From contig NIVC01000034.1 of assembly GCA_002269645.1 (NCBI GenBank), positions 62,001 through 126,000 on the forward strand: 64,000 bases of DNA, given 5' to 3'. The notes beneath the pieces are model-generated. The model searched no databases, was not told where the DNA came from, and saw only the letters and a list, made by a program, of their open reading frames with translations. This stretch comes from Macrostomum lignano (taxonomy: Eukaryota). Position numbers and translations under genes: made by a program. This document shows positions 1 to 29,694 of this stretch, piece after piece (position 1 is the first letter of the stretch; each line of letters starts with the position of its first letter).

Positions 1-205
1 TTCCTATCAGGCGTCCAATGTCATCTGGCAGGAGTTCTGTCAGTCTAGTTGCTGAATTTCATAGCGCTTGGGTGTCTGGAGGGACGACAGGATCAGACCC
101 TAGTGCTGGTCAATTGTGTCTTCAGTTTGCATTTAGAGTGAAGGATTCGTTCCATTCTTCTAGTGCCAGCGCGGCAAAACTGGTTCTGCTAAAACGCGTC
201 TCTGG
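1..205 (+). CDS. Cluster A alternative exon A0 (5'-truncated by window edge)
   Basis: Encodes ...LCLQFAFRV...LVLLKRVSG, donor GG|gtagg at 206, phase 2 like the other A exons. Confidence 0.8.
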
Positions 206-3200
206 GTAGGAGTTTTTGCATCATGTTTATTCCCGCTTCTTTAGGCGAGCCTTGCCAAGTTTATTGAATTTGATAGCACACCTGTGGTAGCTGAAATTGT
301 AACCGTTTTTTATGTCTTTTTTTCAAATAAGTTACCCACTGCGTTTCGGTTGACTGCTCCTCAAAATTGCCAAATGTTTGCACATGGAGCGACGGTCAAT
401 TCAATCGAGCTGCCAACTGGAAGGTCGCAATTGACTCCAATAGTCGCTGTGCTTCCTATTGCCTCGTTCCAAATAAGATTAGGTCTCAAGCGATGACGTC
501 ATCACGTAGCTCTTCGGCACAGGCTTACACTGGAAGCTTTCTTAGTGGCTGGATTGTCGCTGAAGAGTCAAGACAGAATCCAATGTGTCTGCAATTCAAT
601 TACAAGTTTGTTCTAGCAGAGCCAGTAATATCCAAGCCTGGATTGCAACTGGCTTTGTTAAAGCGTACATTTGGGTATGTTTTTGGATTAAATTGGAGCA
701 ACGAGTCTTATTAATCAATTTTTAGCTTGATAAAAAATGCATCAAGTTTAATTAGTATATGTAAAGCATCTAGAACTCGTAAATGCCCTCTTATAGCCGT
801 CTCAATTGATTGCTCATCGACCTCGCCTACTTTTTGCACTTGGAGCGATTCACCTTTTAATCGGGCAGCCAATTGGAAGGCCGCAATCGATCCCAGCGTT
901 CGTAGCGGTGGTAGAAGCGCGTCCTATTGCTTGATTCCAAATAGACCAGTAGCTACAGAAGACACTACTCACAGCGGTAGCTTTCTTAGTAATTGGATAA
1001 CCAAAACGAAAGAATCCGGTTCGCCAGAGCAGCAGATGTGTGTTCAGTTTGCGTACAAGTTTATTGGTTCGCCAATGACTAGAATGCATCTGGCTCTGTT
1101 AAAGCGTTCATATGGGTAAGGTCTAAAACCTGTCAGGTAAAAGTGAGCTTTTTACAGTAGAGTTTCTTTGAGCAACGAGTCCTTGTGTATGCTGCTTTTT
1201 CATTTTTGCTATAGGTACGTTTGTACTTGTTTTATTGCGTTATAGTGACATGTCTTGCCTCTTCGATTAATTGCTCGTCCAATTCGCCTATGCTCTGCTC
1301 GTGGAGCGATTATCCATTCAATCGAGCCGCTAATTGGAAGGCAACAATCGATTCTAATAGTCGTTCGTCCTCTTATTGTTTAATTCCTAATGCGGCTTTG
1401 GTGATGCCTATTAATGCAGCGTCTGAACAAGGATTTGCGGCCAGCTTTATTAGCGGTTGGATCGCTGGAAAAAACCAACGCTCGATGTGCTTGCAGTTTG
1501 CGTATAAATTTTTAGTGTCATCTCAATTGCCTGAACGTAGGCAGTCTTCTCTGGCATTATTGAAACGTTCATTTGGGTATGCTTTTATTTCAACTGATGC
1601 GATAAAAAAATGAGTACAAAAAGGTTCTGCTGCCCCCATAGATTAAAAAATTTCGTCAGGAGCGATGCATTGAAAAGCCTTAAAATGCGTCGTATGTTTG
1701 GTCATGAAGCTTTACTCCGGGCCTCTGTGAGACTGTATATTCGGGTGCAACAAAAAACTACTCCGTCTCTTAGAAGTAAAAGTTTTGAGATGGAGCAATG
1801 AGCCTTTATAATGTTAATAGAGTGGAAGTATGATGACGCATGATGCATTTTCTCTGAAAATAATTACTATAGCTACTTCGTCGACACATTTAATTGACTG
1901 CTCATCGAGCTCTCCTATGCTTTGCGCATGGAGCGATGATCCTTACAATCGAGCAGCCAATTGGAAGGTGGCCATCGACCCCAGAACTGGCCACTCGTCC
2001 TACTGCATGATCCCGAATGATCGCGCCGTGTTAGCAGCCACTTCAACACGTCATCAGCAGTTTACTGGCATCTTCCTCAGCAACTGGATTGCTAAGCAAA
2101 ATCTTCAAGCTCAAAGCTCGTCGGCAAGCGAGCATCAGATGTGTCTGCAGTTCTCCTATAGACTAGTTTCAGAATCAGTATCATCTAGTGTACATCTGAC
2201 TCTTCTAAAACGATCTTTTGGGTAGAGTTATAAGTGATTTTTACATTTTTGCATGAGCGTCGTACATAATAGTTCCATGAGTTTAAATGCGAGCCTTGCC
2301 AATACAATAATCAATTAAAGGGTGTAGAATACAAGCCAACTCTAATTCTTTTAAAACAAACACATCCTCACAGAGTCTGTACATGTACATGGCTCTAGAA
2401 TCGATTGCGATTTTTCTAACCAACGCATGTGCCAATATGCCAATGATCCTGCCAACGATCTAGTTGCCTGGCGTTGGACCTCCGTGCAGGTTCCCATGGC
2501 AACGATTCCTACTCGAACAGACGCCGTCTGTCTACTACCAGTAGTAGGCAGTAGAACGCCAGTTGGTCAAGACAGCCTGTCTGGAAAGCTATGGTTTCCA
2601 GGCTGGCTGTCTGCTATTGACCTTGTCAAAGGAGATAGCAGTTCCGCGTCCATGTGCCTAGGGTTCTCTCTGTACTTTACCACAGGAGCTAGTCTTACTC
2701 TATTGAAACGGTCGCGTGGGTATGTTCTTTTACTATGGATCAAGAAGTTTAGAGCGGAAGTGTAAATCTAAATCTTACGTTATTTATTATGTCAGTGATT
2801 TGTAAATAATCGAATCATTATTTAATTTCATTAGTCGCTCTAAGCTTTGGTCTTTAGTTTTTACTGTATCTACATTTGCTTTATTTGCTCAACATTGCGA
2901 ATTAAATTTGTTTGCTTAATTACTTATATAATATTTGATGACCATAGATGTGTACTAACATCATTCGCCTAACTCTAGGAATTAATACTCGTACTTACTG
3001 TAATCTGTGCATTTATTTATAAAAATTTGGCAGCGGGGAAGACTTCAAGGTACCTTGCACCATCGGAGCCTAATTGAAATTTACTTTTTAATTATAATCT
3101 GCCTTTGCTGATTTCCTAAGAGCTAAATAATGTGCGAATTCAAACGGTCTGGTGCAAAGAAATAACGTTAAACGTTTGTTTATTGGCCAATATGCAAGTA

Positions 3201-6200
3201 ATTAACTAATTATCTATGCTCTTTGTAAAGCTTCTTTTTAAATTAGTCATGGTTTTGCGTAAAACTAGGCGTAGTTCATTCTTCCCAACTGCTGATCAAA
3301 CTAGGCGTAGTTCATTCTTCCCAACTGCTGATCAAAAGTAAGAAAAAATGACGGTTTCCAGTACACAGCAGATACCCCCAAATCCTTTTGAAAAAAAGGT
3401 CGTGCATGTCCGGCTCGAAACTCGAAAATGGCTTAGAAGTAAACTCACACTTGTGCAAAAGTGTTACTCTGTGGAAATCTGCTAGCTCGGAAAGCAGTCA
3501 AGCTAATGTTGATGCTACTGAAAGTAGTTCTGCTAGCGGTAGTGGCAGTTGGTCTGGTTGGCGTACAGTTCACGCTAGTATTGTCTCTAGTGCCGACTTC
3601 AAAGTAAGAACTTACACATCTAATGAAGTCTTCTGAAGTGCTGCCCGAAATTATTGTAGTTCAACCCTTTCCAATGTTGCAAAAAGTATTTAGAATCTGT
3701 ATCTTGTCAATTATTTAGGTCCTGCATCTCAGACTCCGAACTGTCAAATGGTCAGAAAGTGATGTCACACCTTTGCAAAAGTGTAGAACTTTGGCGTTCC
3801 AATCAAAAACCAATGCTAAGCAGCTTGTCAAATTGGAATTCAATGCAGCTATCAGTTGGAGTGGAGACAGATTTCAAGGTGATTTTTTTTAAACAAAGAA
3901 TTCTACTTAGCAGAGTACTTAGTAGGTCTTTCCCGCTGTTTGAACTCGAAATTTTCTCTGATTAAACATTTTTTGACACCTGAAGCTACCTCTACCCCAT
4001 TCAGATCTTGCTCGCAGCTTAAAGCAGTTAGGCATGGTGACAAAAAGTTAAGAACATCAAACTGCGACAATTGGGAATTGTGGACATCTGCAGCCGCTAA
4101 TAATGCCCCAGGTGGTAATTGGTTTACCCAAGCTGTTACCATTGAACCAGATACAGATTTCAAGGTTAGACTTAAATCATTAATCCTTTTTATTGTTATC
4201 TTGTTCCCCGCCTGCCAAAGTTCGAGTTTAAGAACATGTTTCTAAAACTTCGATACTACAGTGGATATTTGATATTTCGACAACAAATCCACAAGATCTT
4301 GTACAGTGGCCAGCAATATTAAAATGTCTGGAGCCGAGAAGCGAAAATCTCTCTGCGAAAGTGACGTACTATGGACTAGTGCAGTATCGAACTTGGCTAG
4401 TTGGCGTATAGTGTCTGTAGATTTGCAACAAACTACTGACTTCAAGGTAGAGTACTTGCGCAAATTGCCCTACTTTTAGCTTCCCTGCTGTCAATTTGAG
4501 GACAAGTTTAAATAATGTCTAAATAAGTAGATTTAACTAATTACTAAATCCTTCCAACTCCGCAATATTTATCATAGTTCATGCACAGTGAAAAAGCCAA
4601 AAGAAAGAAAGTTCAGTCTGCACATGTGTCGCAACGAAGATGTATGGACTTCGTCAGCTATTAGGGATAGAGTGACAGCTGCTGGTGAATGGAGAACTAT
4701 TTCGGTTGATCTGAAATCTAATACAGATTTCAAGGTAAACTTTCTTATTGTTCCCTGAGTCTTCCCTCTGCCAAAGCTACTCGTTTTTTCGCAGCTTTAC
4801 TATAAGTGGAAAATTAGTTTTTTGCATTCCCCATAATGAATATAGATCTTGTGTTTCAACGGAAAAGAAAAGAGCCGGTCAGGAAGTGGCGGGACATTAT
4901 TGGTATGAGGCAGTCTAAATTCAATTCTCGATATATACTACTAGAAATTAGTTTTCACTGAGAAATTATTGGTTCAATAATCTATTTCTAGTGAAAATAT
5001 TAAGCTATGGAAAACAGCAGCGCTATATGGACAGCAGTGGACTCCAGTGTCAGTTGACATAGTTACTGGACAAGATTTTAAGGTAAATTATGCATCGTTT
5101 GAAGTCTTCTCCGTGCATGCACTTTTAAAAACGCAGGTCTATGGCGATGATAATCCCAAATAAATAGGGTTGAACCGCTATTTTCGCAGCTCTTGCACAC
5201 AAAAAGTTCGCAAGGAGATGGGCGCCGACTTCAAGTCTGTAGTATGCGATAATCGAGTGGTGTGGAGCTCCGATGCTGCGCTTTATAGCGCCTCTACCCG
5301 CACTTGGTCTAGTGGAGTTGTTAGTTTACCTACTGGGTCCGATTTTAAGGTATCTTCAAAATGACTTTTTCTGGACATTATTGAACTTTTGCCACTAATC
5401 ATATCGGGACCTTGAAGTTTTCCGTTGCAAATAGTTTTCAGGGTAAAAAAACTGACAGAAAGAATAGCTAAATAGAGATTTTGTTACGATTTTACTTAAA
5501 GATCTTGCAGCCAAGAGAGCAGAAGTGTTCATCAACAGTCGGGCAAGGATTCAAGTCGCTTCTGTGCCACAACGAAGTTGTGTGGCGGTCTGTTACTAGC
5601 ATTGAGGCTGAGCAAAGACAAGTTGGTTCCTCGTGGTTGGTGCAGCACGTTTCTTTAGAACCCGGCTCTGATTTTAAGGTACATTATCATTGCGGTATAT
5701 CATGTTTACAGAAATCCATTGGGATGTCTGGGACACCTTGAAGTCTTTCCTGAAAATTTAAATTTTGTGTTGCACCAGAATCTAGTATTTCTACTACTGT
5801 TTTGTCTACTATTTCAACGTCAGATCTTGTAGTCAAGAAAGTACTAGAGTTCGTCAACGATCGGGCAAAGAGATCAAATCCCTGACTTGTCACAATGAGG
5901 TTGCTTGGCGTTCTGATGCCAGTGATATCGGTTCTGTTAGTCATGCTGGGTCTTGGACGCGCCAGAAAGTTAGCATGGAATCTGGATCGGATTTTAAGGT
6001 ATAGCTTATAGCTTATAACTAAATGATTAATGCCTTCTTAAAGTCTTCCCCTGTATTTCTCAAATATTCTGTAGCTTAATCAAAACTAGAGAACTGCACG
6101 ATTTTGTTCTCAACATTAGATTGTGCTCAACTTCTGAGGATAAAGAAAACGATCGTTATACAAGTCCCCATCTGTGCAAGAATAAACGTTCGCTAATAAT

Positions 6201-9200
6201 AATTTCGGTCGCATTTTAAAGTCTAAATCCTGGTGTTTATATTCGGTATCTCTAGATCTTAGGCATCGGTCTGATTTTAAGGTAAATGAAGCTCTTTCTT
6301 GCTGCCAAGCATAGTATAGGATAGTTAAATTGCCGCTTCTGAACAAAGAAAAAAAGTAAATTTTTTATTTCAGGTCTTGTACTCAAGACCATCGTCAGAA
6401 TGAGGGTCTTAAGTATAATTTTGTCACTTGCGGCAATCAAGTAGTATGGAGCGCCGCTCAGCCTAGTGTAGCTCAATGGCAGTACGCTCAGGTTGCATTG
6501 CAGCATTCGCAAGATTTCAAGGTACTTTTCTCACGGTGCTTCCCCGCTGGTATAAATGTGTTAGTTTAAGATTCAACTTTCTAATATTATTGCATTAATT
6601 TTTTAAAACAATGGTTCAGTTCGTGTCTGCAATCTGATCAAGTTCAATCAGATGGCTTGTTCACATCAGTGACATGTAACAATAAGAAATTATGGTTAGC
6701 CGATCAATCTTTAAGTGGCAAATTCAATGGCTGGTCTATTGTCAATGTCGATTTGACTTCTCGTAGGGACTTTAAGGTAAATTACTAGTAATGGGGATTT
6801 GGAATATTTTTGATTGAAGTCTTCCCTAGCAAGAATTATTTCAGTGCTAAAAATTCTCATATTTTATTTTGGCTTTGGCTTTTTAAAATGCCAGATCTTG
6901 TTCCACTTTGGAGGACCGAGAAAATGGTCGATTTATTAGTGCTCACACGTGCAAAAATGAGCGTATCTGGATTGCACCCAACTTAACTGTAAATCCAAAA
7001 GTCTTTAAACGTTGGCAGCTGGCAACTGTGCCGCTCAGTTTTATCCGAAACTCAGATTTTAAGGTGAAAAGTTTTCCCATTAGCTGCCAATTTTATTATC
7101 GAGTTATTCGATTTTTTATTGAGTAGGGTATTAAAAAAAGCAAAATTATTTTTGCACAGTTCATGCACACAAGACCAGCGAGAAACGATGGGTCAATAGT
7201 ATAACTTTACCACTTGTGGAAATCAGGTTATCTGGAAGTCTGTTGACAGCAGTAGCTTGCTTGTCTGGAGGCGTATTCAAATAAGCTTGCAACAGTTAAA
7301 TGATTTCAAGGTTTCTTTTCGGGTTCTTTGGGCTTTTCATCGACTATCAAATAGACTTCCCCGCTGCTTATACTAAATTGTTCAGCTATATGAAACCGTT
7401 CTGCATTGATATCTCTCATGAATTTTTCTGTAATTGAAAAAAAAACAAATTAGTTCGTGCCAGCAGTCGGATCGGGTCAAATCAGACGGTGTTTTCACAT
7501 CGGTTCTGTGCGATAACAAAAAGTTATGGACCACTGGCGTTACAACTGACTACCCTTTGTCAGCTAGAGCAAGTGGTTGGTCTGTTGTGAATGTAGATCT
7601 GTCTTCTAGGGGAGACTTTAAGGTAACAATATTTAAATAATATTCTTTTGAAACTTGCAAAGTACCTTGAAGTGTCTTTTAACTGCCTAATCAACAGTTA
7701 AATCAAGTGTCCAATAAAAATTATGAAAAACATTTTAGCTCATGTAAACAAGCCAATGAAATTGAAAGAAACGAAATTTTCACTTCGATTTTGTGCAAAA
7801 ACAAGCAGCTTTGGTCAACCGCAAATAGTTCATCTGTTCGAACTTGGCTATCTCCTAGTAGCTACAACTGGGACACCATATCAATTTCTATAAATTCCGA
7901 TAGCGATTTTAAGGTATATACGAGCGTAATTAGCTGTCTTCTTTCCACATAATTACAGATGTTTTGGCAAAAATTCAATCAAAATTTGTTAATCGGTTCA
8001 ATATTTAGAGCGTTACATACAAACAAACAAATCTTAGACATTTAGTATATGTGGATGGATGAATGGGTAGATAGTTTAAGTTTAAAAAACGGCTCCTTTA
8101 GCAAGGTATTTTGAATCAGTCTCCGCCATGAAACTCGATAAAATTCAAGAGTTTATCTATCAGAATTGTTTAATTCATTAAGCGTGGCTAATGATCTTAT
8201 TTAGTTCATGCAGCCAATCTGACGTCAATGACAGTGGTAGAACTCGAACTGCCATGCTGTGTCACAGTGATAAACTTTGGATAAGTCATAAAGATGATTC
8301 AAGTAACAGATGGTCTAGCGTGCAAGTTTCTGTTTCCTCGGGAAATGATTTTAAGGTATTAATAGTGACATTGTTAGTTATAGTATTTTTTAAACATGTG
8401 ATCCTCTTAGCATTCAATAAACCCTTTTAGCCAAGATATATCAAGCATTTAAAAGTTTAGGAAACTTTGGCCGTTTTTTCCTTAAATCGGTCGCATGCAT
8501 ACATACATGCAAACTTGCATAGTATAAGCGATCTGACAAATAATCCATATAGGTAAAGTAGATTTTGCTTTCCTTGTGTCTTCATTTTGCTGCCAATTTT
8601 TAAGTGACTCAACTCACAGCGTAAGCTTGTACTAACATTTAAATTATTTCCATCTCAGTTCGTGCCACCAGACTGAGCGTAGCGAGTCTGGCCAGGTGAA
8701 AACATCTGTCACTTGTGACAATGTAAAAATTTGGTCAACACCCGCGACTGCCGCTCTTAAATCTAAGCTAGCTGGGATACACGGAAAATATTCAGTGTGG
8801 AATCCGGCTCAAGTTACCATAACAACATCGGTAGACTTTAAGGTATTTTTGTTGGAAAGATTATTTTCTAGGGTGTCGTTTCTCGCTGCCAGAACGAATT
8901 CTTAGGCACAGCACATTCAAGGAAGTTTTCTTGTCGAAACCAAGAAAAATAGTGAATTTAACTTGTGCGAGAAAGCTTCCTTTAGTTTTGTGCAACGAAA
9001 TGTTACCAGCGCTATTAAATTTTAGCAATACAAACAAACGACGATAATGCAATCTTAAACTTGTAGTTCTTGCCGTACAGTGGAAGCAAAACAGTTTGGT
9101 GGTAGCGGTGTGTTCTGTCAGAATAGCCCTCTGTGGCAGCAATCTTATTCTAGCAGTGTCTCATTGGATGCCAAATGGGCTACAGCTGTTGTTGATGTAC

Positions 9201-11323
9201 AATCGACTTCTGACTTTAAGGTTGTTGATTGTACGGATTATGTATTACTACTGTAATTTTAAGAATCATATAATGCAAATGTAAGATGCAATAGCCAGAT
9301 ATTTTTTAATTTTCTTGGTACTAGAGTAATTTTTTCACTCTTTCTAGACTGGATAATAACATTCCAATACGAAGCGTATCGTCTAAACACTTAGTTATCT
9401 AAATGTTACAGTTATCTCGGTCAACAAGTCAGGTCAGAAAATTACCATTAAGAGTAGATTCATTAAGTCTACACCGACTTAGTAGTATTTATTGACAAAT
9501 ACGAGCGTAGTTGTACGAGTTCTTTGAAAGAACTTGTTTCAAAATGACTCTAGCTTAACATGTCTTTTCAGAAGTCTTGAATGTAGGAAAGCAAAACAAC
9601 CTGAGGAGAGTTTGTCTCGCAGTTGTCTTCGAATTTTAAGCACACTTGAACCTAAAATATACAAATTCCTCAAGTTTGACACGTAACGTTTTTTTTCCCA
9701 ACACCCCTTTATTAGTGCACTTGCTGCCAAAGAAATCTGATAAATTATTTGAGGGTTGGGGATGTAGTTACGGCCCTAAAAGAATTTTGTTTCTTTGTTT
9801 CTAGCTCCTGCGAACGACGCAATGTTGACTTGGAGACTAAAAAAGCTGGCGTATTCTGGTAATACCGGTTGAGTAATATGATAGAACAATAAATAGTTAT
9901 GAGTGCAACAATAAATTATTCATTAATAACTGCAGCAGTTCTTTGCAAACTTATCATCAATTTTAGTTTGTAATAACTTCGATTCTACGATAAATTACTC
10001 ATTATGATTCCTAAAGAAGCGCTAGTTCGATATTATACTGAATTTAATTAGTAAAAGACTTTTAATAAGTTTTCAATATATTAATTTCTAATTTCTAAAA
10101 TTAATGGCACTAAATTATATTTGCTTGGATCTCTGTTAAATTTTCAGTAGTGCTTCAATTAAGTATTGTGATCGATTCATAACCTAGCAATTTAATAGAA
10201 CGGTTATGTGTTTCAAAAAATGCTGTATTGGTTCAAGTTCCGTTTTGTTAGGTTGAGCTACATATATAGTGTCTCTTAGACTAGTGTATCACTTATCAAA
10301 TCGAACCATTGTTACTCAACCGGCATTGCCTGCTCAGTAAATATCCCCGTTACTGCCTGTACAGCCACAGCAAGACCCTGTGGACATCAAAAAGTAATTT
10401 TGGAAGTAGTGCTATTAGAAAATCTTGGAGTCGGCAAGTTATTGATTTAAGAGATGCCTCGGACTTCAAGGTAAATTTAAATATTAGGAAACACTCAAAT
10501 CCTTATGGAACGATAAAAGAGCATAAAACGAAAATGTTAACTTATTTCTTATTTTATTTTTTAGCTCATTTTCGAAGGTACCATTCCGGCCAACAATCCG
10601 AACGCCCGAATTTGCGTTGACAACATCACGGCTTATCATCGACCGTGTCACCGTGAGTTTTTCAGCGGCTTTTTCCTAAGTATCTTTATAAGATAGTTGA
10701 TTAGGTAATGTAGCAGGTACTGATTTGTACTGATGTAATTGATGTTCTATTTCTTAGAAATCGCCGCCTCAGCCTACGAAGCGTCGATGCGTCGCTGGCT
10801 CGAACCAATGGTATTCATCTTCATTGGCGCCCTCGCCTTCGCCCTGATCATCGCCGTGTCCATCTTTGCCATTCGAGTCAACCGTCGTCGCAGCAAGAAA
10901 TTGTCGCCGGGCAGCAGCGAGGACGGCTCTGCTTCGCCGCAGCGACCGAACCGTCAGCAGCATCACCGACGCCAGCAGGAGGCCATGCTGCTGCACGCTG
11001 AACGTCTCGCCGATGGACCTGCTTCGGGTTCAGCCGCCGTCGGCGCTGTGCCGATCGGCCACGGCCACGGGCCCCGGCGCCCGGCTCCGCCAGTCCCGGC
11101 CGAGCAGCCGAGCCTTGACGAGCTGCTTAGCAACGGACATCGAGCTGCTGCTTCTGCTACCGCTCCGGCCGCCGCTGCTGGTCATAACGATCCGCCGCCT
11201 CGCTACGAGGAAGCCATGGGCCTGGTTGCTTCCGCCGCCGCTGGCAGCAGCTCCGCCTCCGACCAGCTGCCGCCGCCGCATCCGCCTCGACTGAATCGCC
11301 GAAACGGCGGTCACGTGGTTTAA
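1..11323 (+). CDS. MAM-domain single-pass transmembrane receptor with two mutually exclusive exon clusters; 5' end lies outside the window. Model: one A exon + one B exon + 10565..10652 + 10758..11323
   Basis: Joined exons rebuild a MAM fold: CDF..C.W (A5 IDCDFSNQRMCQY), S.WI....CL.F.Y, LW....W..V.L...F, LIFEG...ICVDNIT...C. A hydrophobic helix MVFIFIGALAFALIIAVSIFAI, a basic stop-transfer RVNRRRSKK and a PPPRYEEA motif follow. All junctions are GT-AG with compatible phases (1|A|2|B|0|C1|1|C2). Confidence 0.88.
332..674 (+). CDS. Cluster A alternative exon A1
   Basis: ataag|TT ACC CAC TGC ... VDCSSKLPNVCTWSDGQFNRAANWK...LALLKRTFG|gtatgt; 343 nt (3n+1). Confidence 0.85.
797..1115 (+). CDS. 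Cluster A alternative exon A2
   Basis: ttatag|CC GTC ... IDCSSTSPTFCTWSDSPFNRAANWK...LLKRSYG|gtaagg; 319 nt (3n+1). Confidence 0.85.
1246..1576 (+). CDS. Cluster A alternative exon A3
   Basis: ttatag|TG ACA ... INCSSNSPMLCSWSDYPFNRAANWK...LLKRSFG|gtatgc; 331 nt (3n+1). Confidence 0.85.
1873..2221 (+). CDS. Cluster A alternative exon A4
   Basis: ctatag|CT ACT ... IDCSSSSPMLCAWSDDPYNRAANWK...LLKRSFG|gtagag; 349 nt (3n+1). Confidence 0.85.
2374..2719 (+). CDS. Cluster A alternative exon A5 (divergent, closest to the canonical MAM start)
   Basis: tcacag|AG TCT ... IDCDFSNQRMCQY...MCLGFSLYF...LLKRSRG|gtatgt; 346 nt (3n+1). Confidence 0.85.
3026..3053 (+). promoter_or_regulatory. Cluster B candidate docking site TTTGGCAGCGGGGAAGACTTCAAGGTAC
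   Basis: Single copy between A5 and B1. Its reverse complement GTACCTTGAAGTCTTCCCCGCTGCCAAA matches a motif in the intron before nearly every B exon. Confidence 0.82.
3399..3603 (+). CDS. Cluster B alternative exon B1
   Basis: ag|G TCG TGC: SCMSGSKLENG...HLCKSVTLW...W...DFK|gtaaga; 205 nt; purine-rich acceptor. Confidence 0.75.
3719..3878 (+). CDS. Cluster B alternative exon B2
   Basis: SCISDSELSNGQKVMSHLCKSVELW...W...ETDFK|gt; 160 nt. Confidence 0.82.
4005..4164 (+). CDS. Cluster B alternative exon B3
   Basis: SCSQLKAVRHGDKKLRTSNCDNWELW...NW...DTDFK|gt; 160 nt. Confidence 0.82.
4296..4446 (+). CDS. Cluster B alternative exon B4
   Basis: SCTVASNIKMSGAEKRKSLCESDVLWTSAVSNLASWRIVSVDLQQTTDFK|gt; 151 nt; not in the ORF track. 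Confidence 0.82.
4578..4734 (+). CDS. Cluster B alternative exon B5
   Basis: SCTVKKPKERKFSLHMCRNEDVWTSS...EWRTISVDLKSNTDFK|gt; 157 nt. Confidence 0.82.
4846..5082 (+). CDS. Cluster B alternative module B6, split into 4846..4902 + 4992..5082
   Basis: SCVSTEKKRAGQEVAGHY-TG|gtatga...tttctag|T-ENIKLW...QW...GQDFK|gt; the intron interrupts the second Cys codon. Confidence 0.75.
5190..5349 (+). CDS. Cluster B alternative exon B7
   Basis: SCTQKVRKEMGADFKSVVCDNRVVW...TW...GSDFK|gt; 160 nt. Confidence 0.82.
5502..5678 (+). pseudogene. Cluster B exon B8 with an apparent 1-nt deletion (pseudo-exon or assembly indel)
   Basis: Starts SCSQESRSVHQQSGK like B9 but is 177 nt (3n); LCHNEVVW...GSDFK is in another frame. 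Confidence 0.7.
5824..5998 (+). CDS. Cluster B alternative exon B9
   Basis: SCSQESTRVRQRSGKEIKSLTCHNEVAW...SW...GSDFK|gt; 175 nt. Confidence 0.82.
6120..6281 (+). pseudogene. Cluster B exon B10, frameshifted pseudo-exon
   Basis: LCSTSEDKENDRYTSPHLCKNK, then the first conserved Trp is missing; SWCLYSVSLDLRHRSDFK is in another frame; 162 nt (3n). Confidence 0.7.
6374..6521 (+). CDS. Cluster B alternative exon B11
   Basis: SCTQDHRQNEGLKYNFVTCGNQVVWSAAQPSVAQWQYAQVALQHSQDFK|gt; 148 nt. Confidence 0.82.
6620..6776 (+). CDS. Cluster B alternative exon B12
   Basis: SCLQSDQVQSDGLFTSVTCNNKKLW...GWSIVNVDLTSRRDFK|gt; 157 nt. Confidence 0.82.
6895..7063 (+). CDS. Cluster B alternative exon B13
   Basis: SCSTLEDRENGRFISAHTCKNERIW...RW...NSDFK|gt; 169 nt. 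Confidence 0.82.
7160..7310 (+). pseudogene. Cluster B exon B14 with an in-frame stop
   Basis: SCTQDQRETMGQ*YNFTTCGNQVIW...NDFK; TAG at 7197-7199 where paralog B11 has AAG; 151 nt. Confidence 0.72.
7454..7622 (+). CDS. Cluster B alternative exon B15
   Basis: SCQQSDRVKSDGVFTSVLCDNKKLW...GWSVVNVDLSSRGDFK|gt; 169 nt. Confidence 0.82.
7739..7913 (+). CDS. Cluster B alternative exon B16
   Basis: SCKQANEIERNEIFTSILCKNKQLW...NW...DSDFK|gt; 175 nt. Confidence 0.82.
8205..8355 (+). CDS. Cluster B alternative exon B17
   Basis: SCSQSDVNDSGRTRTAMLCHSDKLW...RW...GNDFK|gt; 151 nt. Confidence 0.82.
8659..8842 (+). CDS. Cluster B alternative exon B18
   Basis: SCHQTERSESGQVKTSVTCDNVKIW...VW...SVDFK|gt; 184 nt. 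Confidence 0.82.
9067..9220 (+). CDS. Cluster B alternative exon B19
   Basis: SCRTVEAKQFGGSGVFCQNSPLW...KW...TSDFK|gt; 154 nt. Confidence 0.82.
9805..10470 (+). CDS. Cluster B alternative module B20, split into 9805..9858 + 10365..10470
   Basis: SCERRNVDLETKKAGVF-TG|gtaata...gtacag|C-HSKTLW...SW...ASDFK|gt; intron in the same Cys codon as in B6. Confidence 0.78.
10565..10652 (+). CDS. Constant exon, MAM C-terminus
   Basis: ttag|LIFEGTIPANNPNARICVDNITAYHRPCH-C|gtgagt; phase 0 to 1; single copy. Confidence 0.85.
10758..11323 (+). CDS. Constant terminal exon: transmembrane helix and Pro/Ala-rich tail with PPxY
   Basis: cttag|AA ATC; 22-residue hydrophobic stretch, RRRSKK, PPPRYEEA, stop TAA at 11321-11323. 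Confidence 0.85.
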
Positions 11324-13797: not shown

Positions 13798-16717
13798 ATG
13801 TCTGCCGAAACAGCGGGAGGCTCCAGCGGCGGTGGCAGCAACAATCTGACCGAATACTTGAAGCGCTACACTGAACCTCTGCCAAAGAAAAAGAAACGCC
13901 GCGTCGATAAGGGCGGTGTTAGCAGCGACGATGGTAGTAAAAAACGTGTTAAAAGACGCGACAAGCGATTAAAACCTGTTATCATAGGTGAAGACTTCGA
14001 AGATGAAGTCGATGAAGAAGAGGAGGCTGCAATAGCTCTGGCCAAGCAGCAGTTGGCTGAATCGGCTGCCGGACGTAAGAAATTATTCAAATCCTCCTTT
14101 CAGACTGTTGCTGGTCCAGACGATGATAATGATTCGGAGTCAAGCGGTTGGCAGATACCCAACAGTAATCTTTCTCTACCACGCAAAGGAAACCGAAAAA
14201 ATGGTAGTCAGTTTTCGCAGCACGGACAGCAAAAACCCGATAGCGACTTGTCGTCACCACGTCGAGGGCAAGGGTCACAAGATTCTGACTTGTCACCACC
14301 GCGCCCGGCACAAGGATCAAAAGATAACGACTTGTCGCCATCACGGCGAACACAAAGACGTCGAGATGATGACTTGTCTCCACCACGTCGAAGGCAAAGA
14401 CCTAGAGACACAGACTTGTCGCCACCACGCCGAGGACAAGGACCTCGAGATGATGACTTGTCGCCTCCTCGCCGTAGCCAAAAACCTCAAGATAATGACT
14501 TATCGCCACCTCGTCGAGGTAGACCTCAAGATGACGACTTATCGCCACCAAGACGAGGACAAAAACGTCAAGATAACGATTTATCGCCACCAAGACGAGG
14601 ACAAAGGCGTCAAGATGACGATTTATCGCCCCCAAGACGAGGACAAAGGCGTCAAGATGACGACTTGTCCCCACCTCGTCAAGGTAGACCTCAAGATGAC
14701 GACTTGTCTCCACCAAGACGAGGACAAAGGCGTCAAGATGACGACTTGTCCCCACCTCGTCAAGGTAGACCTCAAGATGACGACTTGTCTCCACCAAGAC
14801 GAGGACAAAGGCGTCAAGATGACGACTTGTCCCCACCTCGTCAAGGTAGACCTCAAGATGACGACTTGTCTCCACCAAGACGAGGACAAAGGCGTCAAAA
14901 TGACGATTTATCGCCACCAAGACGAGGACAAAGACCTCAAGCTAACGAATTGTCGCCACCGCGAAGGCGACCACAGCAGGACGCTGATTCTTCGCCGACC
15001 CGACGTGGAGACCCAGGTCCCAACCAAGCAAAAGGCGCTTTCGACGAAGACAGCGGTAGCGACGCCGAAGCGAACGCTCTATCGGCTCAGGTGCGCCGAC
15101 GGGCTAAACTGACGCACCCGAGCGAGGTGATGCTGGATGAAGATGACGATGAAAAGTTGGGCAGGTGAGTTATCTTGGTCTCTTAAAATACTTATTTAGC
15201 ATGGATTTTTGGGCATAAGCTCATGGCTTTCAGGGGATCTTTAATACTCGTAGCGCATAAATTGGTTTCAAAGTAAAAAACTGAGGTAAACAAACTATCA
15301 GATTAGTGTGGTAAAACGCCACCAGTACACAGTTGCTACCTATAGCCGTAATGAGGCTTCGATGGATTTTTAGTTCATCCTACAGATCTTAAAAGACTGG
15401 ATTACCCATGCTACTCAAAGTAAGGGTGACCCAGCAACTGAGGATTTGGGAGTCTGGCCCAGCAACTGACACTCTGGGAGGCTGGCCCAGCAACTGACAC
15501 TCTGGGAGGCTGGCCCAGCAACTGAGGATTTGGGAGGCTGGCCCAGCAACTGAGGATTTTGGAGGCTGGCCCAGCAACTGACACTCTGGGAGGCTGGCCC
15601 AGCAACTGACACTCTGGGAGGCTGGCCCAGCAACTGACACTCTGGGAGGCTGGCCCAGCAACTGAGGATTTGGGAGGCTGGCCCAGCAACTGAGGATTTT
15701 GGAGGCTGACCATGTTCCTAAGAAATATTTTTCAGTTATAGTGAGTTCAAATTCCTATCAGATTTGCCATAGAAAGGAGGTTGTCAGGAATGAAATTTCA
15801 AAGTTTGCTGGACTACGTACCAAAATTTATGTTTATATAACAAATCCAAAACATTTATTGTACCTTATTAAAGATATCCAGTAAATAGAATTGTCTAGCG
15901 GAAGCCATAGAACTCGTAGCCAACATTGGTTAGCAAAGGCTGTAGTGGTGGCCTTTCTCATTGTCCTTATCAATTAGTTATGCTTTTTATCAGTAGAAAT
16001 GTTTAGCTACAATAATTGCTGAATACTCCTAGCTATAGAAAATGAGCCAATCCGTAACGCCCCACTAGATACGCTACGGCAATTCGTCGCAAGAAGCAGC
16101 CGGATCCCAGAAAGTCAAAAAAGGCCGCCGAGAAGCCAGAACCAACGCCCGAAGAGTTGGCCAAAGCTGAGGAATTAAAAGCCCAATACGCTCGCTGGGG
16201 CTCCGGCTTGGCCCAGGCTGCGGAACGCGAGCAGCGCGCTGTCGAAGCTCAAATTGAGTCGGCTAAGCCTCTAGCTCGAAGTCGCGATGATGCCGATTTA
16301 GACTCGATGCTGCGAGGCCAACTCCGGGTCGACGATCCCATGGCGGAGTTTCTGCGCGACTCGGAGCGTCGCCGAGCCGAGAAGGCGGCTAAGAAAGCGG
16401 CTAAGAAAGCTTTGAAAAAGAAAAATAAGAAAGAAAAAGAGCGAAAGAAGATCAAACGGGAGCCAGGTGAGAAACTCGGCAGGTTAAGTCGATCGGCTTC
16501 GTCCGCATCGCCGTCGCCGTCGCCGCCCCCGCCGCCCAAGCAGCGGCCTCGCTACGACGGCCCGCCCGGGCCGCCCAATCGATTTGGCATCGAGCCCGGC
16601 TACCGCTGGGACGGCGTCGATCGGAGCACCGGCTTTGAGAAGCGCTACTTTGAATCGATTAATCAGCGTAAAGCGCTTAGCCAGGAAGCTTATAAATGGT
16701 CAACTGAAGATATGTAG
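13798..16717 (+). CDS. BUD13: BUD13/CWC26 RES-complex splicing factor, join(13798..15164,16069..16717)
   Basis: N-terminal EYLKRY, about 19 DxDLSPPRR repeats, C-terminal ARYARWGSG-like segment, KPLARSRDDADLD, DDPM and PPNRFGIEPGYRWDGVDRSTGFEKRYF; phase-2 GT-AG intron. Confidence 0.92.
15330..15880. mobile_element. Dispersed repeat carrying a 28-bp minisatellite (ggcccagcaactgacactctgggaggct), copy 1, in the BUD13 intron
   Basis: Array at about 15420-15710; both flanks (cttaaaagactggatt...ctactcaaagt; aaatatttttcagtta...) recur around the copy near 17 kb. Confidence 0.6.
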
Positions 16718-16939: not shown

Positions 16940-17540
16940 TGCTACCTGACTGTACTTAGGCTTTGCTGGATTTTAAGTTCATTCTACACATCTTAAAAGA
17001 CTGGATTGGCCCATCCGCTACCCATGCTACTCAAAGTGAGGGGTGGCCCAGCAACTGATGCCTTGGAAGGTTGGCCCAGCAACTGACACTCAGGGAGGCT
17101 GGCCCAGCAACTGACACTCTGGGAGGCTGGTCAGGCAACTGACACTCTGGGAGGCTGGCCCAGCAACTGAGACTCTGGGAGGCTGGCCCAGCAGCTGACA
17201 CTCTGGGAGGCTGGTCAGGCAACTGACACTCTGGGAGGCTGGCCCAGCAACTGAGCATCTGGGAGGCTGACCCAGAAACTGAGGATCTGGGAGGCTGGCC
17301 CAGCAACTGTTGATTTTGGCGGCTGGCCCTGTTCCTAGGTTTCTGGTTCTGTTCCTCAGGGACTACTTAAACTAGTTTTTGTTGAGTTGTTGCTTTGAAA
17401 TATTTTTCAGTTATTTTGAGAGCAAAATCCTGTCAAATTATGTTATAGGAAGAAGCTTGAAACCAATAAAATTGTCAAATTTTGCTTGACTCTAAGTAAC
17501 AAAAATTATATTTACTTAAAAATTCCTAAACGTTTGAAGG
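16940..17540. mobile_element. Dispersed repeat carrying the 28-bp minisatellite, copy 2
   Basis: Same unit at about 17045-17330 with homologous flanks. Confidence 0.6.
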
Positions 17541-17608: not shown

Positions 17609-18266
17609 GTCAATCCTGACGTTAATCAACATTAGTATAGCATTTCTCATAGCATCTAATCTCACATGAAACTCGTACTTCCACACGCCGCAAACCATGA
17701 AGCACGTAGTCAGATTTAGTTTTAATATATGAGTTGCAAGTAAATAATATTCCAGAGAGATAATATTTCTAAGTATAAGCTGGCTGAGTTCAGTAGCTGC
17801 TCGTCGACTGAGTCGAAGGCTGCTTGACATCCTCAAACAGCTGCCGCAGTGGTATTGGCGATAAGGTGGCGCAACCGTCAGCACCTTTGCTTGGTTGACA
17901 GAATCGTAGCATCAATGGGAAATCTTTAATCAGATCTTTAGTCAATCCTGACGTTAATCAACATTAGTATAGCATTTCTCATAGCATCTAATCTCACATG
18001 AAACTCGTACTTCCACACGCTGCAAACCATGAAGCACGTAGTCAGATTTAGTTTTAATATATGAGTTGCAAGTAAATAATATTCCAGAGAGATAATATTT
18101 CTAAGTATAAGCTGGCTGAGTTCAGTAGCTGCTCGTCGACTGAGTCGAAGGCTGCTTGACATCCTCAAACAGCTGCCGCAGTGGTATTGGCGATAAGGTG
18201 GCGCAACCGTCAGCACCTTTGCTTGGTTGACAGAATCGTAGCATCAATGGGAAATCTTTAATCAGA
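17609..18266. repeat. 326-bp direct tandem duplication (17609..17934 and 17941..18266)
   Basis: Two near-identical copies separated by tcttta; covers the last codons and 3' flank of the TRP-like gene. Confidence 0.9.
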
Positions 18267-26871: not shown

Positions 26872-27059
26872 TGCTTGGAACTTTTAATATATAATTGCCG
26901 TAGTGCGTTTGTAATTGACAAGCGGTGTTTTCCTGTTGTTTTATTACCCTGCTCTCTACCTGATTATAATTTTGCATCGTGTTTGTCAGCGCTAATTAAT
27001 ATCACACGCTTTCATGGATCACCAAATCTGCTGATATCTGGACTGTGAACTGGACCCAC

Positions 27060-27850
27060 GAACCCTCCTCCAACTGTGCGTCTCTCTCCCCCTAAACACC
27101 CACCCCACCCCCTTTAACTGTTCGCCTCTCTGCCCCTGTACACCCACCACATCCCCTTTAACTGTTCGCCTCTCTGCCCCTGTACACCCACCACACCCCC
27201 TTTAACTGTTCGCCTCTCTGCCCCTGTACACCCACCCACCCCTTTAACTGTTCGCCTCTCTGCCCCTGTACACCCACCACACCCCCTTTAACTGTTCGCC
27301 TCTCTGCCCCTGTACACCCACCACACCCCCTTTAACTGTTCGCCTCTCTGCCCCTGTACACCCACCCACCCCTTTAACTGTTCGCCTCTGCCCCTGTACA
27401 CCCACCACCCCCTTTAACTGTTCGCCTCTGCCCCTGTACACCCACCACACCCCCTTTAACTGTTCGCCTCTCTGCCCCTGTACACCCACCACACCCCTTT
27501 AACTGTTCGCCTCTCTGCCCCTGTACACCCACCCCACCCCTTTAACTGTTCGCCTCTCTGCCCCTGTACACCCACCACACCCCCTTTAACTGTTCGCCTC
27601 TCTGCCCCTGAACACCCACCCCACCCCTTTAACTGTTCGCCTCTCTGCCCCTGTACACCCACCACACCCCCTTTAACTGTTCGCCTCTCTGCCCCTGTAC
27701 ACCCACCCCACCCCTTTAACTGTTCGCCTCTCTGCCCCTGTACACCCACCACACCCCCTTTAACTGTTCGCCTCTCTGCCCCTGAACACCCACCCCACCC
27801 TCCTCCAACTGTGCATCTCTCTCCCTTCATACCCAACCACCCTCCTCCGA
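27060..27850. repeat. About 45-bp minisatellite (tttaactgttcgcctctctgcccctgtacacccaccacacccc)
   Basis: About 16 tandem units. Confidence 0.9.
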
Positions 27851-28679
27851 CTTTCAATAATTATTCATAACAGCTGATAATCAGTGTTTTTCTCTTTACT
27901 TTTTGTTGTACTGTTTGACATTATCACTATATTTCTATATTTATTAACTTTTTGCCCCGCGTTCTTTAATCGTTTTTTACATAGAATTCTACAATCTGCG
28001 ATATCAGAAATAAAATGTTTATATAATTTTTATTTCTCTTTCCTATTTTGTTGTTGTCGCTTTTTCCCTCAGATAATTTTAATACGCTTTCTTCATTTCA
28101 GTAGTATCTATAGATTTTTTGTTATTAGGATAAAATATGTAAATTCTCATTGAGTTGTGCTTTTGATTTTTACATGTAATACCCAAAAAATGCATACTTT
28201 ACGTTGAGTTTAGACTAGCAATCCTTTAGTGTTGAAATACCGGAAAGTATTATTATTGAATTTCAATTAGAAGTTATATCAATATTTAATTCTTGATGTT
28301 CGCATCATTTTATAAACTATTGTAAATTTTAAACACCAAGTTTATAACGCGTTATGTTTATTCTGCATGTGCGTAATATACTACTAGCTTGTACTAATAA
28401 TGATGCTATATAAACCAGTATTTATTTAAGGAAGTTTGAAAATTTATTTAAAATCACCTCTCAGTGCCTGTTGGTTTCTGTGCGTTGAATAATTTAACCA
28501 AACTTATTGTTTAAGTGAAACTGTTTAATTTGTTCTAATAATCACTCACTCACTTTCATCTTTTTCGCTTTTTTGAACCAATGAAATAACAAACTGATAC
28601 TTGATGCCTGTTCGTTACTGCGCTGCGTTGACTATTGAAATTATTAAAGAAAGTTTTTTGTCTTCAAGTTATTCTTTTT

Positions 28680-29470: not shown

Positions 29471-29694
29471 AAAGTCGTTAATAAGTCTTTAAGACCCCGT
29501 TGGCATTACTGTTACAGAATGCAAGCGAGCAGAGTATAAAATCGTGCTAAATGACTTAGCTAATGTGGCAAATTTTAAGTAGCAATCATATTAGCCTTCA
29601 AAAATTTTCTGTTATATTATCTCTTCGATCTAAAAGCAAAGGTAGTTCAACAGTTCAACAGAGTTTCAGTATCATCTCCATCTGTACGTCAATC

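What the first reader, a model, noticed from the sequence alone, without database searches (positions are those of the whole stretch)
3026..9731. Docking site and selector sequences for cluster B (competing RNA duplexes)
Seen: 3026-3053 TTTGGCAGCGGGGAAGACTTCAAGGTAC has reverse complement GTACCTTGAAGTCTTCCCCGCTGCCAAA. Partial matches lie before B1 (3316-3328), B2 (3624-3645), B3 (3926-3938), B4 (4204-4219), B5 (4480-4494), B6 (4758-4775), B7 (5099-5113), B8 (5409-5428), B9 (5735-5752), B10 (6037-6051), B11 (6287-6308), B12 (6539-6549), B13 (6814-6826), B14 (7069-7090), B15 (7356-7367), B16 (7656-7673), B17 (8111-8128, weak), B18 (8572-8596), B19 (8879-8891) and B20 (9720-9731). Most end 60-90 nt before the acceptor (B19 is about 175 nt). 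Many mismatches are C to T opposite docking-site G, which keeps G-U pairs. Different selectors cover different overlapping halves of the site, and none was seen after the last exon. Known: this is the geometry of the Drosophila Dscam1 exon 6 docking site and selectors. Inference: only one selector can pair at a time, looping out the upstream B exons.
Basis: partly seen in the sequence, partly recalled or inferred. Interest (0 to 1): 0.96.

Follow-up and report, generated by a model that had tools for sequence, protein, structure and literature searches.

The report
Flatworm exon-choice RNA docking system
In a Macrostomum lignano (flatworm) gene for a variable cell-surface protein, one short intron element matches by base-pairing a small element in front of almost every one of 20 alternative exons; this is the layout that lets fruit-fly Dscam1 pick a single exon, and I found no report of it outside arthropods at this scale.

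Summary
The window is Macrostomum lignano contig NIVC01000034.1. It holds a gene for a single-pass membrane protein with one MAM domain, and two adjoining arrays of alternative exons encode that domain: 12 A exons (6 in the window) and 20 B exons.

- **Uniqueness.** Element 3022-3059 lies in the A-B intron. Among all 41-nt windows of the gene it is the single outlier for pairing with the B introns (mean -32.9 against -16.4 +/- 2.8 kcal/mol).
- **Selectors.** 18 of 20 introns beat their own shuffles. B1 and B20 have only short matches, but at the expected position.
- **Position.** Selectors end 47-86 nt before the acceptor, except B19 (175 nt).
- **Exclusivity.** 19 of 20 selectors overlap dock 3038-3040.
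- **Substitutions.** Changes in the selectors favour G-U-preserving transitions (p = 0.003).
- **Second system.** Cluster A has its own, unrelated docking site and selectors with the same geometry. The two systems do not cross-pair.

The mechanism (competing RNA duplexes that select one exon) is inferred, not shown. Sister-species covariation could not be tested.

Three new points emerged. The dock copies a B-exon 3' end plus its 5' splice site. The two-array gene is conserved across flatworms, including Schistosoma and Hymenolepis. No comparable dock was found in those two loci.

The parts
3022..3059 (+). Cluster B docking site (core 3026-3053, TTTGGCAGCGGGGAAGACTTCAAGGTAC). 3041-3051 copies the B-exon 3' end plus GT; 3046-3057 is the palindrome CAAGGTACCTTG.
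   Evidence: Unique outlier in the mock-dock scan. Selector consensus equals its reverse complement at 36 of 37 columns. No stable local fold. Exon-end signature.
3280..3292 (+). B1 selector, upstream copy (TCTTCCCAACTGC), in the 37-nt tandem duplication
   Evidence: not significant on its own
3317..3329 (+). B1 selector, acceptor-proximal copy, 69 nt before the acceptor
3624..3645 (+). B2 selector
   Evidence: dG -31.4, z -3.7, 0/200 shuffles
3910..3938 (+). B3 selector (strongest, spans nearly the whole dock)
   Evidence: dG -40.9, z -6.6
4204..4222 (+). B4 selector (pairs with the 5' half of the dock)
   Evidence: dG -31.2, z -4.3
4473..4497 (+). B5 selector
   Evidence: dG -35.2, z -5.1
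4750..4775 (+). B6 selector
   Evidence: dG -34.1, z -4.6
5099..5116 (+). B7 selector
   Evidence: dG -33.5, z -4.2
5406..5432 (+). B8 selector
   Evidence: dG -34.9, z -5.3
5735..5750 (+). B9 selector (pairs with the 3' half of the dock)
   Evidence: dG -37.5, z -5.9
6037..6051 (+). B10 selector
   Evidence: dG -26.3, z -2.7, 2/200
6287..6308 (+). B11 selector
   Evidence: dG -32.3, z -3.6
6539..6549 (+). B12 selector
   Evidence: dG -30.8, z -3.7
6814..6826 (+). B13 selector
   Evidence: dG -31.3, z -4.0
7069..7094 (+). B14 selector
   Evidence: dG -27.7, z -3.1
7353..7367 (+). B15 selector
   Evidence: dG -35.0, z -4.8
7657..7691 (+). B16 selector
   Evidence: dG -37.1, z -7.7
8101..8126 (+). 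B17 selector (uses the dock 3' flank 3050-3059)
   Evidence: dG -34.7, z -4.6
8572..8601 (+). B18 selector
   Evidence: dG -34.7, z -4.2
8875..8891 (+). B19 selector (175 nt before the acceptor, the positional exception)
   Evidence: dG -31.3, z -3.0
9720..9731 (+). B20 selector (short; pairs only with dock 3026-3034; 73 nt before the acceptor)
   Evidence: Not significant by energy. Cofold gain only -2.4.
3399..9220 (+). B1-B19 variable exons, each coding S-C...C...W...DFK. Coordinates: 3399-3603, 3719-3878, 4005-4164, 4296-4446, 4578-4734, 4846-4902 + 4992-5082 (B6, split), 5190-5349, 5502-5678, 5824-5998, 6120-6281, 6374-6521, 6620-6776, 6895-7063, 7160-7310, 7454-7622, 7739-7913, 8205-8355, 8659-8842, 9067-9220. 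Spliced length is 3n+1 for all except B8 (177 nt) and B10 (162 nt), which are 3n.
   Evidence: B3 is used in the annotated protein P0001. B8, B10 and B14 are defective in this assembly.
9805..10470 (+). B20, split exon (9805-9858 + 10365-10470)
10565..10652 (+). Constant exon (LIFEGTIPANNPNARICVDNITAYHRPCH, end of the MAM domain)
10758..11322 (+). Transmembrane and cytoplasmic exon, up to the stop codon
2374..2719 (+). A12, the last cluster A exon. Its donor is the nearest one upstream of the dock, 306 nt away.
246..269 (+). Cluster A selector for A8. It is complementary to the cluster A dock, which lies outside the window at L001 10145-10172.
694..709 (+). Cluster A selector for A9
1170..1185 (+). 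Cluster A selector for A10
1787..1806 (+). Cluster A selector for A11
2290..2302 (+). Cluster A selector for A12

Best explanation
The element at 3022-3059 is a docking site in the pre-mRNA of a Macrostomum lignano gene for a MAM-domain membrane protein. A 10-35 nt selector lies about 50-85 nt upstream of the acceptor of each B exon and is complementary to overlapping parts of the dock. Nearly all selectors need the same core of the dock (GGGGAAGAC), so only one dock-selector duplex can exist per transcript. That duplex loops out the B exons upstream of the chosen one and brings its acceptor close to the donor of the chosen A exon, so that exon is spliced in.

B exons are 3n+1 nt long, so including two of them shifts the reading frame. 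This backs up exclusivity at the mRNA level. Cluster A is handled in the same way by a separate dock in intron 1.

Shown here: the elements themselves, their complementarity, uniqueness, position, overlap, substitution bias and orthogonality, and the use of exactly one A and one B exon in the annotated transcript. Inferred: that the duplex forms in vivo, that it activates the adjacent acceptor, and that a further mechanism (for example a repressor, as proposed for Dscam1) silences the B exons downstream of the chosen one.
For: - **Per-intron duplexes.** 18 of 20 introns exceed their dinucleotide shuffles.
- **Uniqueness.** The dock is the single outlier among about 1,900 windows of the gene. 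In the 64-kb window, duplexes of -31 kcal/mol or better occur at 15 sites in the cluster and 1 elsewhere on the + strand.
- **Half-site counts.** The two half-site patterns give 7 matches against 0.83 expected and 12 against 2.16 expected.
- **Position.** Selectors keep a fixed distance to the acceptor (47-86 nt) even in long introns, where the distance to the upstream donor is 187-502 nt.
- **Conservation.** The selector is the only conserved segment of introns that otherwise cannot be aligned.
- **Consensus.** The selector consensus equals the reverse complement of the dock at 36 of 37 columns, and 19 of 20 selectors cover dock 3038-3040.
- **Substitution bias.** Transitions that keep G-U pairs number 25 of 208 sites; transitions that break pairs number 7 of 184 (Fisher p = 0.003).
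- **Accessibility.** The dock region has no stable fold of its own (z = -0.27). Dock-selector duplexes survive cofolding with local structure allowed, with a gain of -9 to -33 kcal/mol for B2-B19.
- **Independent replicate.** The cluster A dock and its 11 of 11 selectors have the same geometry, and the two systems are orthogonal: cognate pairs -33.8 and -32.3 kcal/mol, non-cognate -16.1 and -20.9.
- **Transcript evidence.** The annotated protein P0001 is exon 1 + A1 + B3 + constant exons. Annotated isoforms that differ only in the B-like exon exist in S. mattheei, D. dendriticum and H. diminuta.
Against: - There is no experimental or structure-probing evidence.
- Transcript evidence in M. lignano is a single annotated model.
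- No sister-species sequence could be obtained, so conservation and covariation are untested.
- The same scans found no comparable dock or position-consistent selectors in the orthologous loci of Hymenolepis diminuta and Schistosoma japonicum.
- B1 and B20 selectors are weak, and B20 does not overlap the shared core.
- The wobble bias rests mostly on C>T in T-rich introns. C>T against G>A alone gives p = 0.08, and the copies are not independent.
- The selector core contains UCUUC, a pyrimidine motif of the kind bound by PTB-type proteins (from my own knowledge, not tested).
- Pairing alone does not explain why exons downstream of the chosen one are skipped.
Confidence: 0.78

Rival explanations
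1. The conserved intron motif is a binding site for a splicing regulator, for example a pyrimidine-tract binding repressor on GUCUUCCCC that silences each variable exon. The complementary copy at 3022-3059 plays no pairing role.
For: The core shared by 19 of 20 selectors is pyrimidine-rich and contains UCUUC. A repressor is needed in any case to explain the skipping of downstream exons (model described in PMC6071210). No dock was found in the two neodermatan loci, although the exon arrays are conserved there.
Against: A protein site would not explain a unique, full-length reverse complement placed exactly between the two clusters. It would not explain conservation of the non-pyrimidine flanks (ACCTTGAAG and GCTGCCAAA) in different selectors, always in register with the dock. 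It would not explain the excess of pair-preserving changes. Cluster A repeats the same logic with an unrelated sequence.
Confidence: 0.1
2. The selectors mainly pair with the 5' splice sites of B exons, forming local or cross-exon hairpins that mask donors. On this view the dock is only the fossil 3' end of a dead B exon that shares the same sequence.
For: Dock 3041-3051 is an exact copy of the B-exon end signature GAYTTYAARGT. It is the only non-exon match on the + strand in 64 kb, and in frame it reads FGSGEDFK|GT like B7-B9, B15 and B17. Selectors B8, B9 and B16 can pair with several exon ends at -20 to -27 kcal/mol. Many selectors lie only 0-56 nt after the preceding donor.
Against: Every selector pairs with the dock 10-25 kcal/mol better than with its own upstream exon end (mean -30.9 against -9 to -17). 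Half of the selectors (B4, B5, B6, B12, B15, B19, B20) use the 5' half of the dock, which has no counterpart in exon ends. In four of five long introns the selector stays near the acceptor, not the donor. Exon-end windows do not rank high in the mock-dock scan.
Confidence: 0.07
3. The complementarity is a neutral leftover of an inverted duplication, or of DNA-level recombination among the tandem units, and has no function in RNA.
For: Tandem arrays recombine. The B1 selector lies in a recent 37-nt tandem duplication. Three B exons are defective in the assembly, which shows ongoing decay.
Against: The rest of each intron has diverged beyond alignment, while selectors and dock remain matched. 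The strand-specific G-U bias is an RNA signature. A second, independent dock and selector set exists in cluster A.
Confidence: 0.03

Closest known systems
Drosophila Dscam1 exon 6 cluster docking site and selector sequences (Graveley 2005, as summarised in PMC6071210)
   Same: A single docking site lies in the intron upstream of a large tandem array. There is one selector upstream of each variable exon. The selectors are imperfect, cover overlapping parts of the dock and share a core, so pairing is mutually exclusive. The selector is the only conserved part of the introns.
   Different: - The gene is not Dscam: it has one MAM domain and no Ig or FN3 domains.
- The organism is a flatworm, not an arthropod.
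- The array has 20 exons rather than 48.
- The upstream splice partner is itself a variable exon, because clusters A and B abut with no constitutive exon between them.
- The dock copies a variable-exon 3' end plus a 5' splice-site mimic.
- There is no experimental support and no cross-species conservation data.
Downstream-dock systems: Dscam1 exon 4 and 9 clusters, 14-3-3 zeta, Mhc, MRP1 (PMC6071210; PMC4691838)
   Same: Competing RNA duplexes between one dock and several selectors in arrays of duplicated exons.
   Different: In those genes the dock lies downstream of the array. Here both docks lie upstream of their arrays, and no second, downstream dock was detected.
Duplication model for the origin of competing RNA structures (Ivanov and Pervouchine 2018, PMC6071210)
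   Same: The repeated unit is selector plus exon, and a single unduplicated arm (the dock) lies outside the array. This is the outcome that model predicts.
   Different: Here the unduplicated arm looks like the end of a former exon copy, a detail the model does not require.
Two-exon structure-controlled switches in vertebrates, e.g. ATE1 exons 7a/7b (PMC7797038)
   Same: Exon choice is set by competing intronic base pairings outside arthropods.
   Different: Those are two-exon switches with several regulatory elements, not a many-spoke array built around one dock.

Membership tests
Docking-site/selector mutually exclusive splicing (Dscam1 exon 6 type) | Tandem array of homologous alternative exons with the same phase, where joint inclusion breaks the frame | tested here: met
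   There are 20 B exons with the pattern S-C...C...W...DFK. 18 of them are 3n+1 nt long, starting in phase 1 and ending in phase 0; B8 and B10 are 3n and defective.
Docking-site/selector mutually exclusive splicing (Dscam1 exon 6 type) | Exactly one variable exon per mature transcript | tested here: inconclusive
   The only M. lignano model available (P0001) has one A exon and one B exon. Annotated isoform pairs differing only in the B-like exon exist in S. mattheei, D. dendriticum and H. diminuta. No read-level data could be examined.
Docking-site/selector mutually exclusive splicing (Dscam1 exon 6 type) | A single docking site in the intron between the upstream exon and the first variable exon | tested here: met
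   3022-3059 is the unique outlier in the gene and in the window.
Docking-site/selector mutually exclusive splicing (Dscam1 exon 6 type) | A selector complementary to the dock upstream of each variable exon | tested here: met
   18 of 20 are individually significant. B1 and B20 are short, but at the conserved position.
Docking-site/selector mutually exclusive splicing (Dscam1 exon 6 type) | Selectors overlap on the dock so that only one can pair at a time | tested here: met
   19 of 20 cover dock 3038-3040. B20 (dock 3026-3034) is the exception.
Docking-site/selector mutually exclusive splicing (Dscam1 exon 6 type) | Conservation and compensatory change of dock and selectors in related species | not testable with these tools
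   No other Macrostomum genome could be reached. In the distant H. diminuta and S. japonicum loci no comparable dock was found.
Docking-site/selector mutually exclusive splicing (Dscam1 exon 6 type) | Exon choice is altered by disrupting the pairing and restored by compensatory mutations | not testable with these tools
   This needs an experiment.
Dscam gene family | Ig and fibronectin type III domain architecture | tested here: not met
   Pfam finds only a MAM domain (PF00629, 31.7 bits against a cut-off of 26.4). The best solved relative is the meprin alpha MAM region (E = 1.6e-4).
MAM domain proteins (PF00629) | A Pfam MAM match above the gathering score | tested here: met
   UniRef names P0001 and its flatworm relatives 'MAM domain-containing protein'.

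The most novel reading that the evidence does not exclude
Flatworms as a phylum carry a Dscam-like hypervariable surface receptor built on a MAM domain, with two abutting arrays of mutually exclusive exons. Combinations per species, counting intact exons seen here: about 200 in Macrostomum and roughly 190 in S. japonicum. H. diminuta has 32 B units. In Macrostomum, exon choice evolved, independently of arthropods, into two orthogonal docking-site/selector systems. The cluster B dock is an exapted dead-exon end that keeps a 5' splice-site mimic and an in-frame AG...GT 16-nt pseudo-exon. Selectors would then compete between the dock and real 5' splice sites, coupling acceptor activation to donor control in a way not described for Dscam1.
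Probability: 0.2. Interest if true: 0.92.

Novelty: new member of a known kind. Interest (0 to 1): 0.85.

Why it matters
As far as the searched literature shows, large docking-site/selector arrays are described only in arthropod genes, with Dscam1 as the paradigm (searches found no flatworm case). A clean double system of 12 + 20 exons in a spiralian, in an unrelated gene family, would have three consequences.

- **Evolution.** It would show that this RNA-structure solution to "choose one exon of many" evolves repeatedly from tandem duplication.
- **A second test system.** It would offer a compact locus with 100-150 nt introns for testing the mechanism outside Dscam1.
- **A new receptor family.** It points to a previously undescribed family of variable surface receptors conserved across Platyhelminthes, including schistosomes, liver flukes and tapeworms. 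Annotations there currently mis-join the exon arrays. The biological role is open; cell recognition or an immune or host interface are possibilities.

Tried and rejected
- **Local hairpins between selectors and B-exon 5' splice sites as the main partner.** Rejected as the primary explanation. Every selector prefers the dock by 10-25 kcal/mol.
- **A second dock downstream of cluster B or cluster A.** None appeared in the scans.
- **A locally folded, inaccessible dock.** Not supported.
- **Finding paralogous or orthologous Macrostomum loci.** The homology search with the constant region returned nothing. Exact look-ups of two versions of the TM-exon ORF were not on record. Two metagenome scans were empty.
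- **Schistosome genomic DNA.** The S. mattheei and D. dendriticum proteins were not on record. The T. regenti contig has no B exon in the 939 nt upstream of the constant exon.
- **H. diminuta locus L003.** The energy scan gave only generic purine-rich windows. The introns share a motif, GYTTGTTTGATTG, about 100-130 nt before the acceptor, but no complement was found in the locus.
- **S. japonicum locus L004.** The best window (18010, z about -4) has no position-consistent partners, and no shared motif lies within 300 nt of the acceptors.
- **Tandem Repeats Finder.** It does not detect the exon arrays, because the copies are too divergent.
Full report
**Source and gene.** The window is identical (0 mismatches over 21.3 kb) to Macrostomum lignano contig NIVC01000034.1, assembly GCA_002269645.1. 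It begins inside a + strand gene whose annotated product P0001 (BOX15_Mlig029915g2, 422 aa) is a signal peptide, one MAM domain, a transmembrane helix and a cytoplasmic tail. Pfam MAM scores 31.7 bits against a cut-off of 26.4, and the best solved relative is the meprin alpha MAM region.

**Two exon arrays encode the MAM domain.**
- Cluster A encodes the N-terminal half. It has 12 exons, the last six inside the window, ending at 205, 674, 1115, 1576, 2221 and 2719. Each is 3n+1 nt long.
- Cluster B encodes the C-terminal half, with the pattern S-C...C...W...DFK. It has 20 exons between 3399 and 10470. The 18 intact-length ones are 3n+1 nt; B8 (177 nt) and B10 (162 nt) are 3n.
- The two clusters abut, with no constitutive exon between them.
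- A constant exon (10565-10652) and the TM/tail exon (10758-11322) follow.
- P0001 equals exon 1 + A1 + B3 + constant exons, that is, exactly one exon from each array.

- *Shuffle test.* RNAduplex of 3020-3060 against the intron preceding each B exon, with 200 dinucleotide shuffles per intron, gives z = -2.7 to -7.7 for B2-B19 (0-3 of 200 shuffles as good). It gives z = -0.5 for B1 and B20.
- *Position.* Selectors end 47-86 nt before the acceptor in 18 introns. The acceptor-proximal B1 copy ends 69 nt before it, and B19 is the exception at 175 nt. In the long introns before B17, B18, B20 and B1, the selector stays near the acceptor although it is 187-502 nt from the upstream donor. It therefore belongs to the downstream exon.
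- *Conservation.* The rest of each intron cannot be aligned. The only k-mers shared by many introns that are not low-complexity are pieces of the selector.

**The dock is unique.**
- Every 41-nt window (step 6) of window 1-11300 was used as a mock dock against the 19 inter-B introns. The windows at 3019 and 3025 rank first, with a mean of -32.9 kcal/mol. The background is -16.4 +/- 2.8, and the best non-overlapping window is -25.4, in GC-rich coding sequence.
- Across the whole 64-kb window, duplexes of -31 kcal/mol or better occur at 15 places in the B cluster and once elsewhere on the + strand.
- The half-site patterns give 7 matches against 0.83 expected, and 12 against 2.16 expected.
- The dock region has no stable fold of its own (z = -0.27).
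- When the dock region is cofolded with each intron and its flanks, with local structure allowed, the dock-selector duplex persists for B2-B19 with a net gain of -9 to -33 kcal/mol. B20 gains only -2.4.

**Evidence that the constraint is on pairing.**
- The column consensus of the selectors equals the reverse complement of the dock at 36 of 37 positions.
- Selectors are 89% identical to the reverse complement of the dock but 77% identical to each other. This comparison is partly biased, because the alignment was made to the dock.
- 19 of 20 selectors cover dock 3038-3040. Different selectors use the 5' half, the 3' half or both.
- Of 52 mismatches, 23 are C>T. Transitions that keep a G-U pair occur at 25 of 208 sites, and those that break a pair at 7 of 184 (Fisher p = 0.003). 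C>T against G>A alone gives p = 0.08. T-rich intron composition and shared ancestry weaken this test, so I treat it as suggestive.

**Independent replicate in the same gene.** The same scan on cluster A finds a single outlier in intron 1, at L001 10145-10172 (ATTTGGCAAGGCTCGTTGCTCCATTC), about 75 nt after the exon 1 donor. Its mean is -34.8 kcal/mol, against a background of -19.3 +/- 3.2 for the per-window medians. All 11 introns before A2-A12 carry a selector ending 59-87 nt before the acceptor, and none follows the last A exon. The two systems are orthogonal:

| Dock | A introns (kcal/mol) | B introns (kcal/mol) |
|---|---|---|
| Dock A | -33.8 | -16.1 |
| Dock B | -20.9 | -32.3 |

Two unrelated sequences built to the same plan argue strongly against chance or a single protein-binding motif.

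Dock 3041-3051 (GACTTCAAG|GT) is an exact copy of the B-exon end plus donor. The pattern GAYTTYAARGT occurs on the + strand only at the 20 exon ends and in the dock. In frame the dock reads FGSGEDFK|GT, like the ends of B7-B9, B15 and B17, and a stop precedes it at 3020-3022. The dock therefore looks like the surviving 3' end of a dead exon copy.

One consequence is that the 5' halves of selectors are also complementary to real B-exon 5' splice sites. I tested this as a rival. Each selector prefers the dock by 10-25 kcal/mol over its own upstream exon end (means -30.9 against -9 to -17). B8, B9 and B16 can nevertheless reach -20 to -27 kcal/mol with some exon ends. Masking of 5' splice sites is thus not the main explanation, but it could be a secondary layer.

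**Mechanism.** The best-supported reading is the Dscam1 exon 6 model as described in PMC6071210. One dock-selector duplex forms per transcript, loops out the upstream B exons and activates the adjacent acceptor. The 3n+1 exon length penalises double inclusion. Everything beyond the sequence facts is inference.

**Wider context.** Profile and exhaustive searches find the family only in flatworms. Members come from Schistosoma mansoni, S. japonicum, S. mattheei, S. spindale, Heterobilharzia, Trichobilharzia, Dicrocoelium, Opisthorchis, Clonorchis, Hymenolepis, Hydatigera and two monogeneans.
- Annotated isoform pairs that differ only in the B-like exon exist in S. mattheei, D. dendriticum and H. 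diminuta. Some older models read through several B units.
- The H. diminuta locus (L003) holds 32 B-like units. The S. japonicum locus (L004) holds at least 11 A-like exons and 17 B-like units spread over 40 kb.
- In both species each B unit is split by an intron inside the second Cys codon. M. lignano B6 and B20 are split at the same position.

The two-array gene is therefore ancient in Platyhelminthes. Applying the same dock scans to L003 and L004 gave no comparable outlier and no position-consistent selectors. Conservation of the RNA mechanism outside Macrostomum is unproven, and its absence there was not established either.

**Novelty.** Seven full-text searches found no description of this gene, of mutually exclusive arrays in Macrostomum, or of docking/selector systems in flatworms. 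The library is incomplete. I rate this a new member of a known kind of system: the known mechanism in a new gene family and a new phylum, with two unusual traits, namely abutting clusters and a dock made from an exon end.

Noticed in passing
L001 10145-10172 (outside the window, about 4.5 kb upstream of its start); selectors in the window at 246-269, 694-709, 1170-1185, 1787-1806 and 2290-2302: Cluster A has its own docking site in intron 1 and a selector 59-87 nt before the acceptor of each of A2-A12. The sequence is unrelated to the cluster B system apart from a shared ATTTGGCA start, and the two systems do not cross-pair.
   Followed up: yes
window 3026-3051: The dock reads in frame FGSGEDFK|GT, that is, a B-exon 3' end plus donor. 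With the AG at 3032-3033, the segment 3034-3049 would be a 16-nt (3n+1) in-frame pseudo-exon. Whether it is ever spliced is unknown.
   Followed up: partly
window 3046-3057: A perfect 12-nt palindrome, CAAGGTACCTTG, spans the pseudo-donor of the dock. The sequence just after the dock therefore resembles the start of a selector.
   Followed up: no
window 5502-5678 (B8), 6120-6281 (B10), 7160-7310 (B14): Three B exons look defective in this assembly. B8 is 177 nt long and runs into a stop in the acceptor-defined frame. B10 is degenerate, with stops. B14 has an in-frame TAG. They are either pseudo-exons or assembly errors. B10 and B14 also have some of the weakest selectors.
   Followed up: partly
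window 4903-4991 and 9859-10364; L003 and L004 throughout: B6 and B20 are split by an intron inside the second Cys codon (TG|Y). Every B unit of H. diminuta and S. japonicum is split at the same position. This suggests the intron is ancestral and was lost from most M. lignano copies.
   Followed up: partly
window 3262-3335: A 37-nt tandem duplication upstream of B1 carries the B1 selector, which is therefore present twice.
   Followed up: partly
proteins P0002/P0003, P0008/P0028, P0011/P0031, P0029, P0033: The orthologous gene in parasitic flatworms is annotated either as isoforms differing in one B-like exon or as read-through models that join many B units (H. diminuta P0033, C. sinensis P0029). 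The arrays appear to be mis-annotated in public genomes.
   Followed up: partly
window about 11190-11225; cytoplasmic tails of P0008, P0009, P0011: A cytoplasmic motif PPP[RG]Y[ED]EA[IMV]G (PPxY-like) is conserved from Macrostomum to trematodes and cestodes, although the tails are otherwise unrelated and of low complexity.
   Followed up: no
L003, about 100-130 nt upstream of most a-exon acceptors: H. diminuta introns share the motif GYTTGTTTGATTG at the 5' edge of a polypyrimidine tract about 100 nt long. No complementary partner was found in the locus.
   Followed up: partly
window 13800-16717: The neighbouring + strand gene encodes a Bud13 (RES complex splicing factor) homologue, with Pfam E = 1.7e-32. 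Its coding region contains an 81-nt repeat array at 14245-14960.
   Followed up: partly
window 15423-15708, 17044-17309, 17609-18266, 21363-21789, 25082-29472, 58902-64000: The window holds many satellites. A 28-nt repeat occurs in two places. There is a 332-nt tandem duplication at 99% identity. A 21-nt minisatellite lies inside an intron of the SIR2-family gene. C-rich arrays lie at 25-29 kb. A 23-nt satellite of more than 5 kb runs to the end of the window.
   Followed up: no
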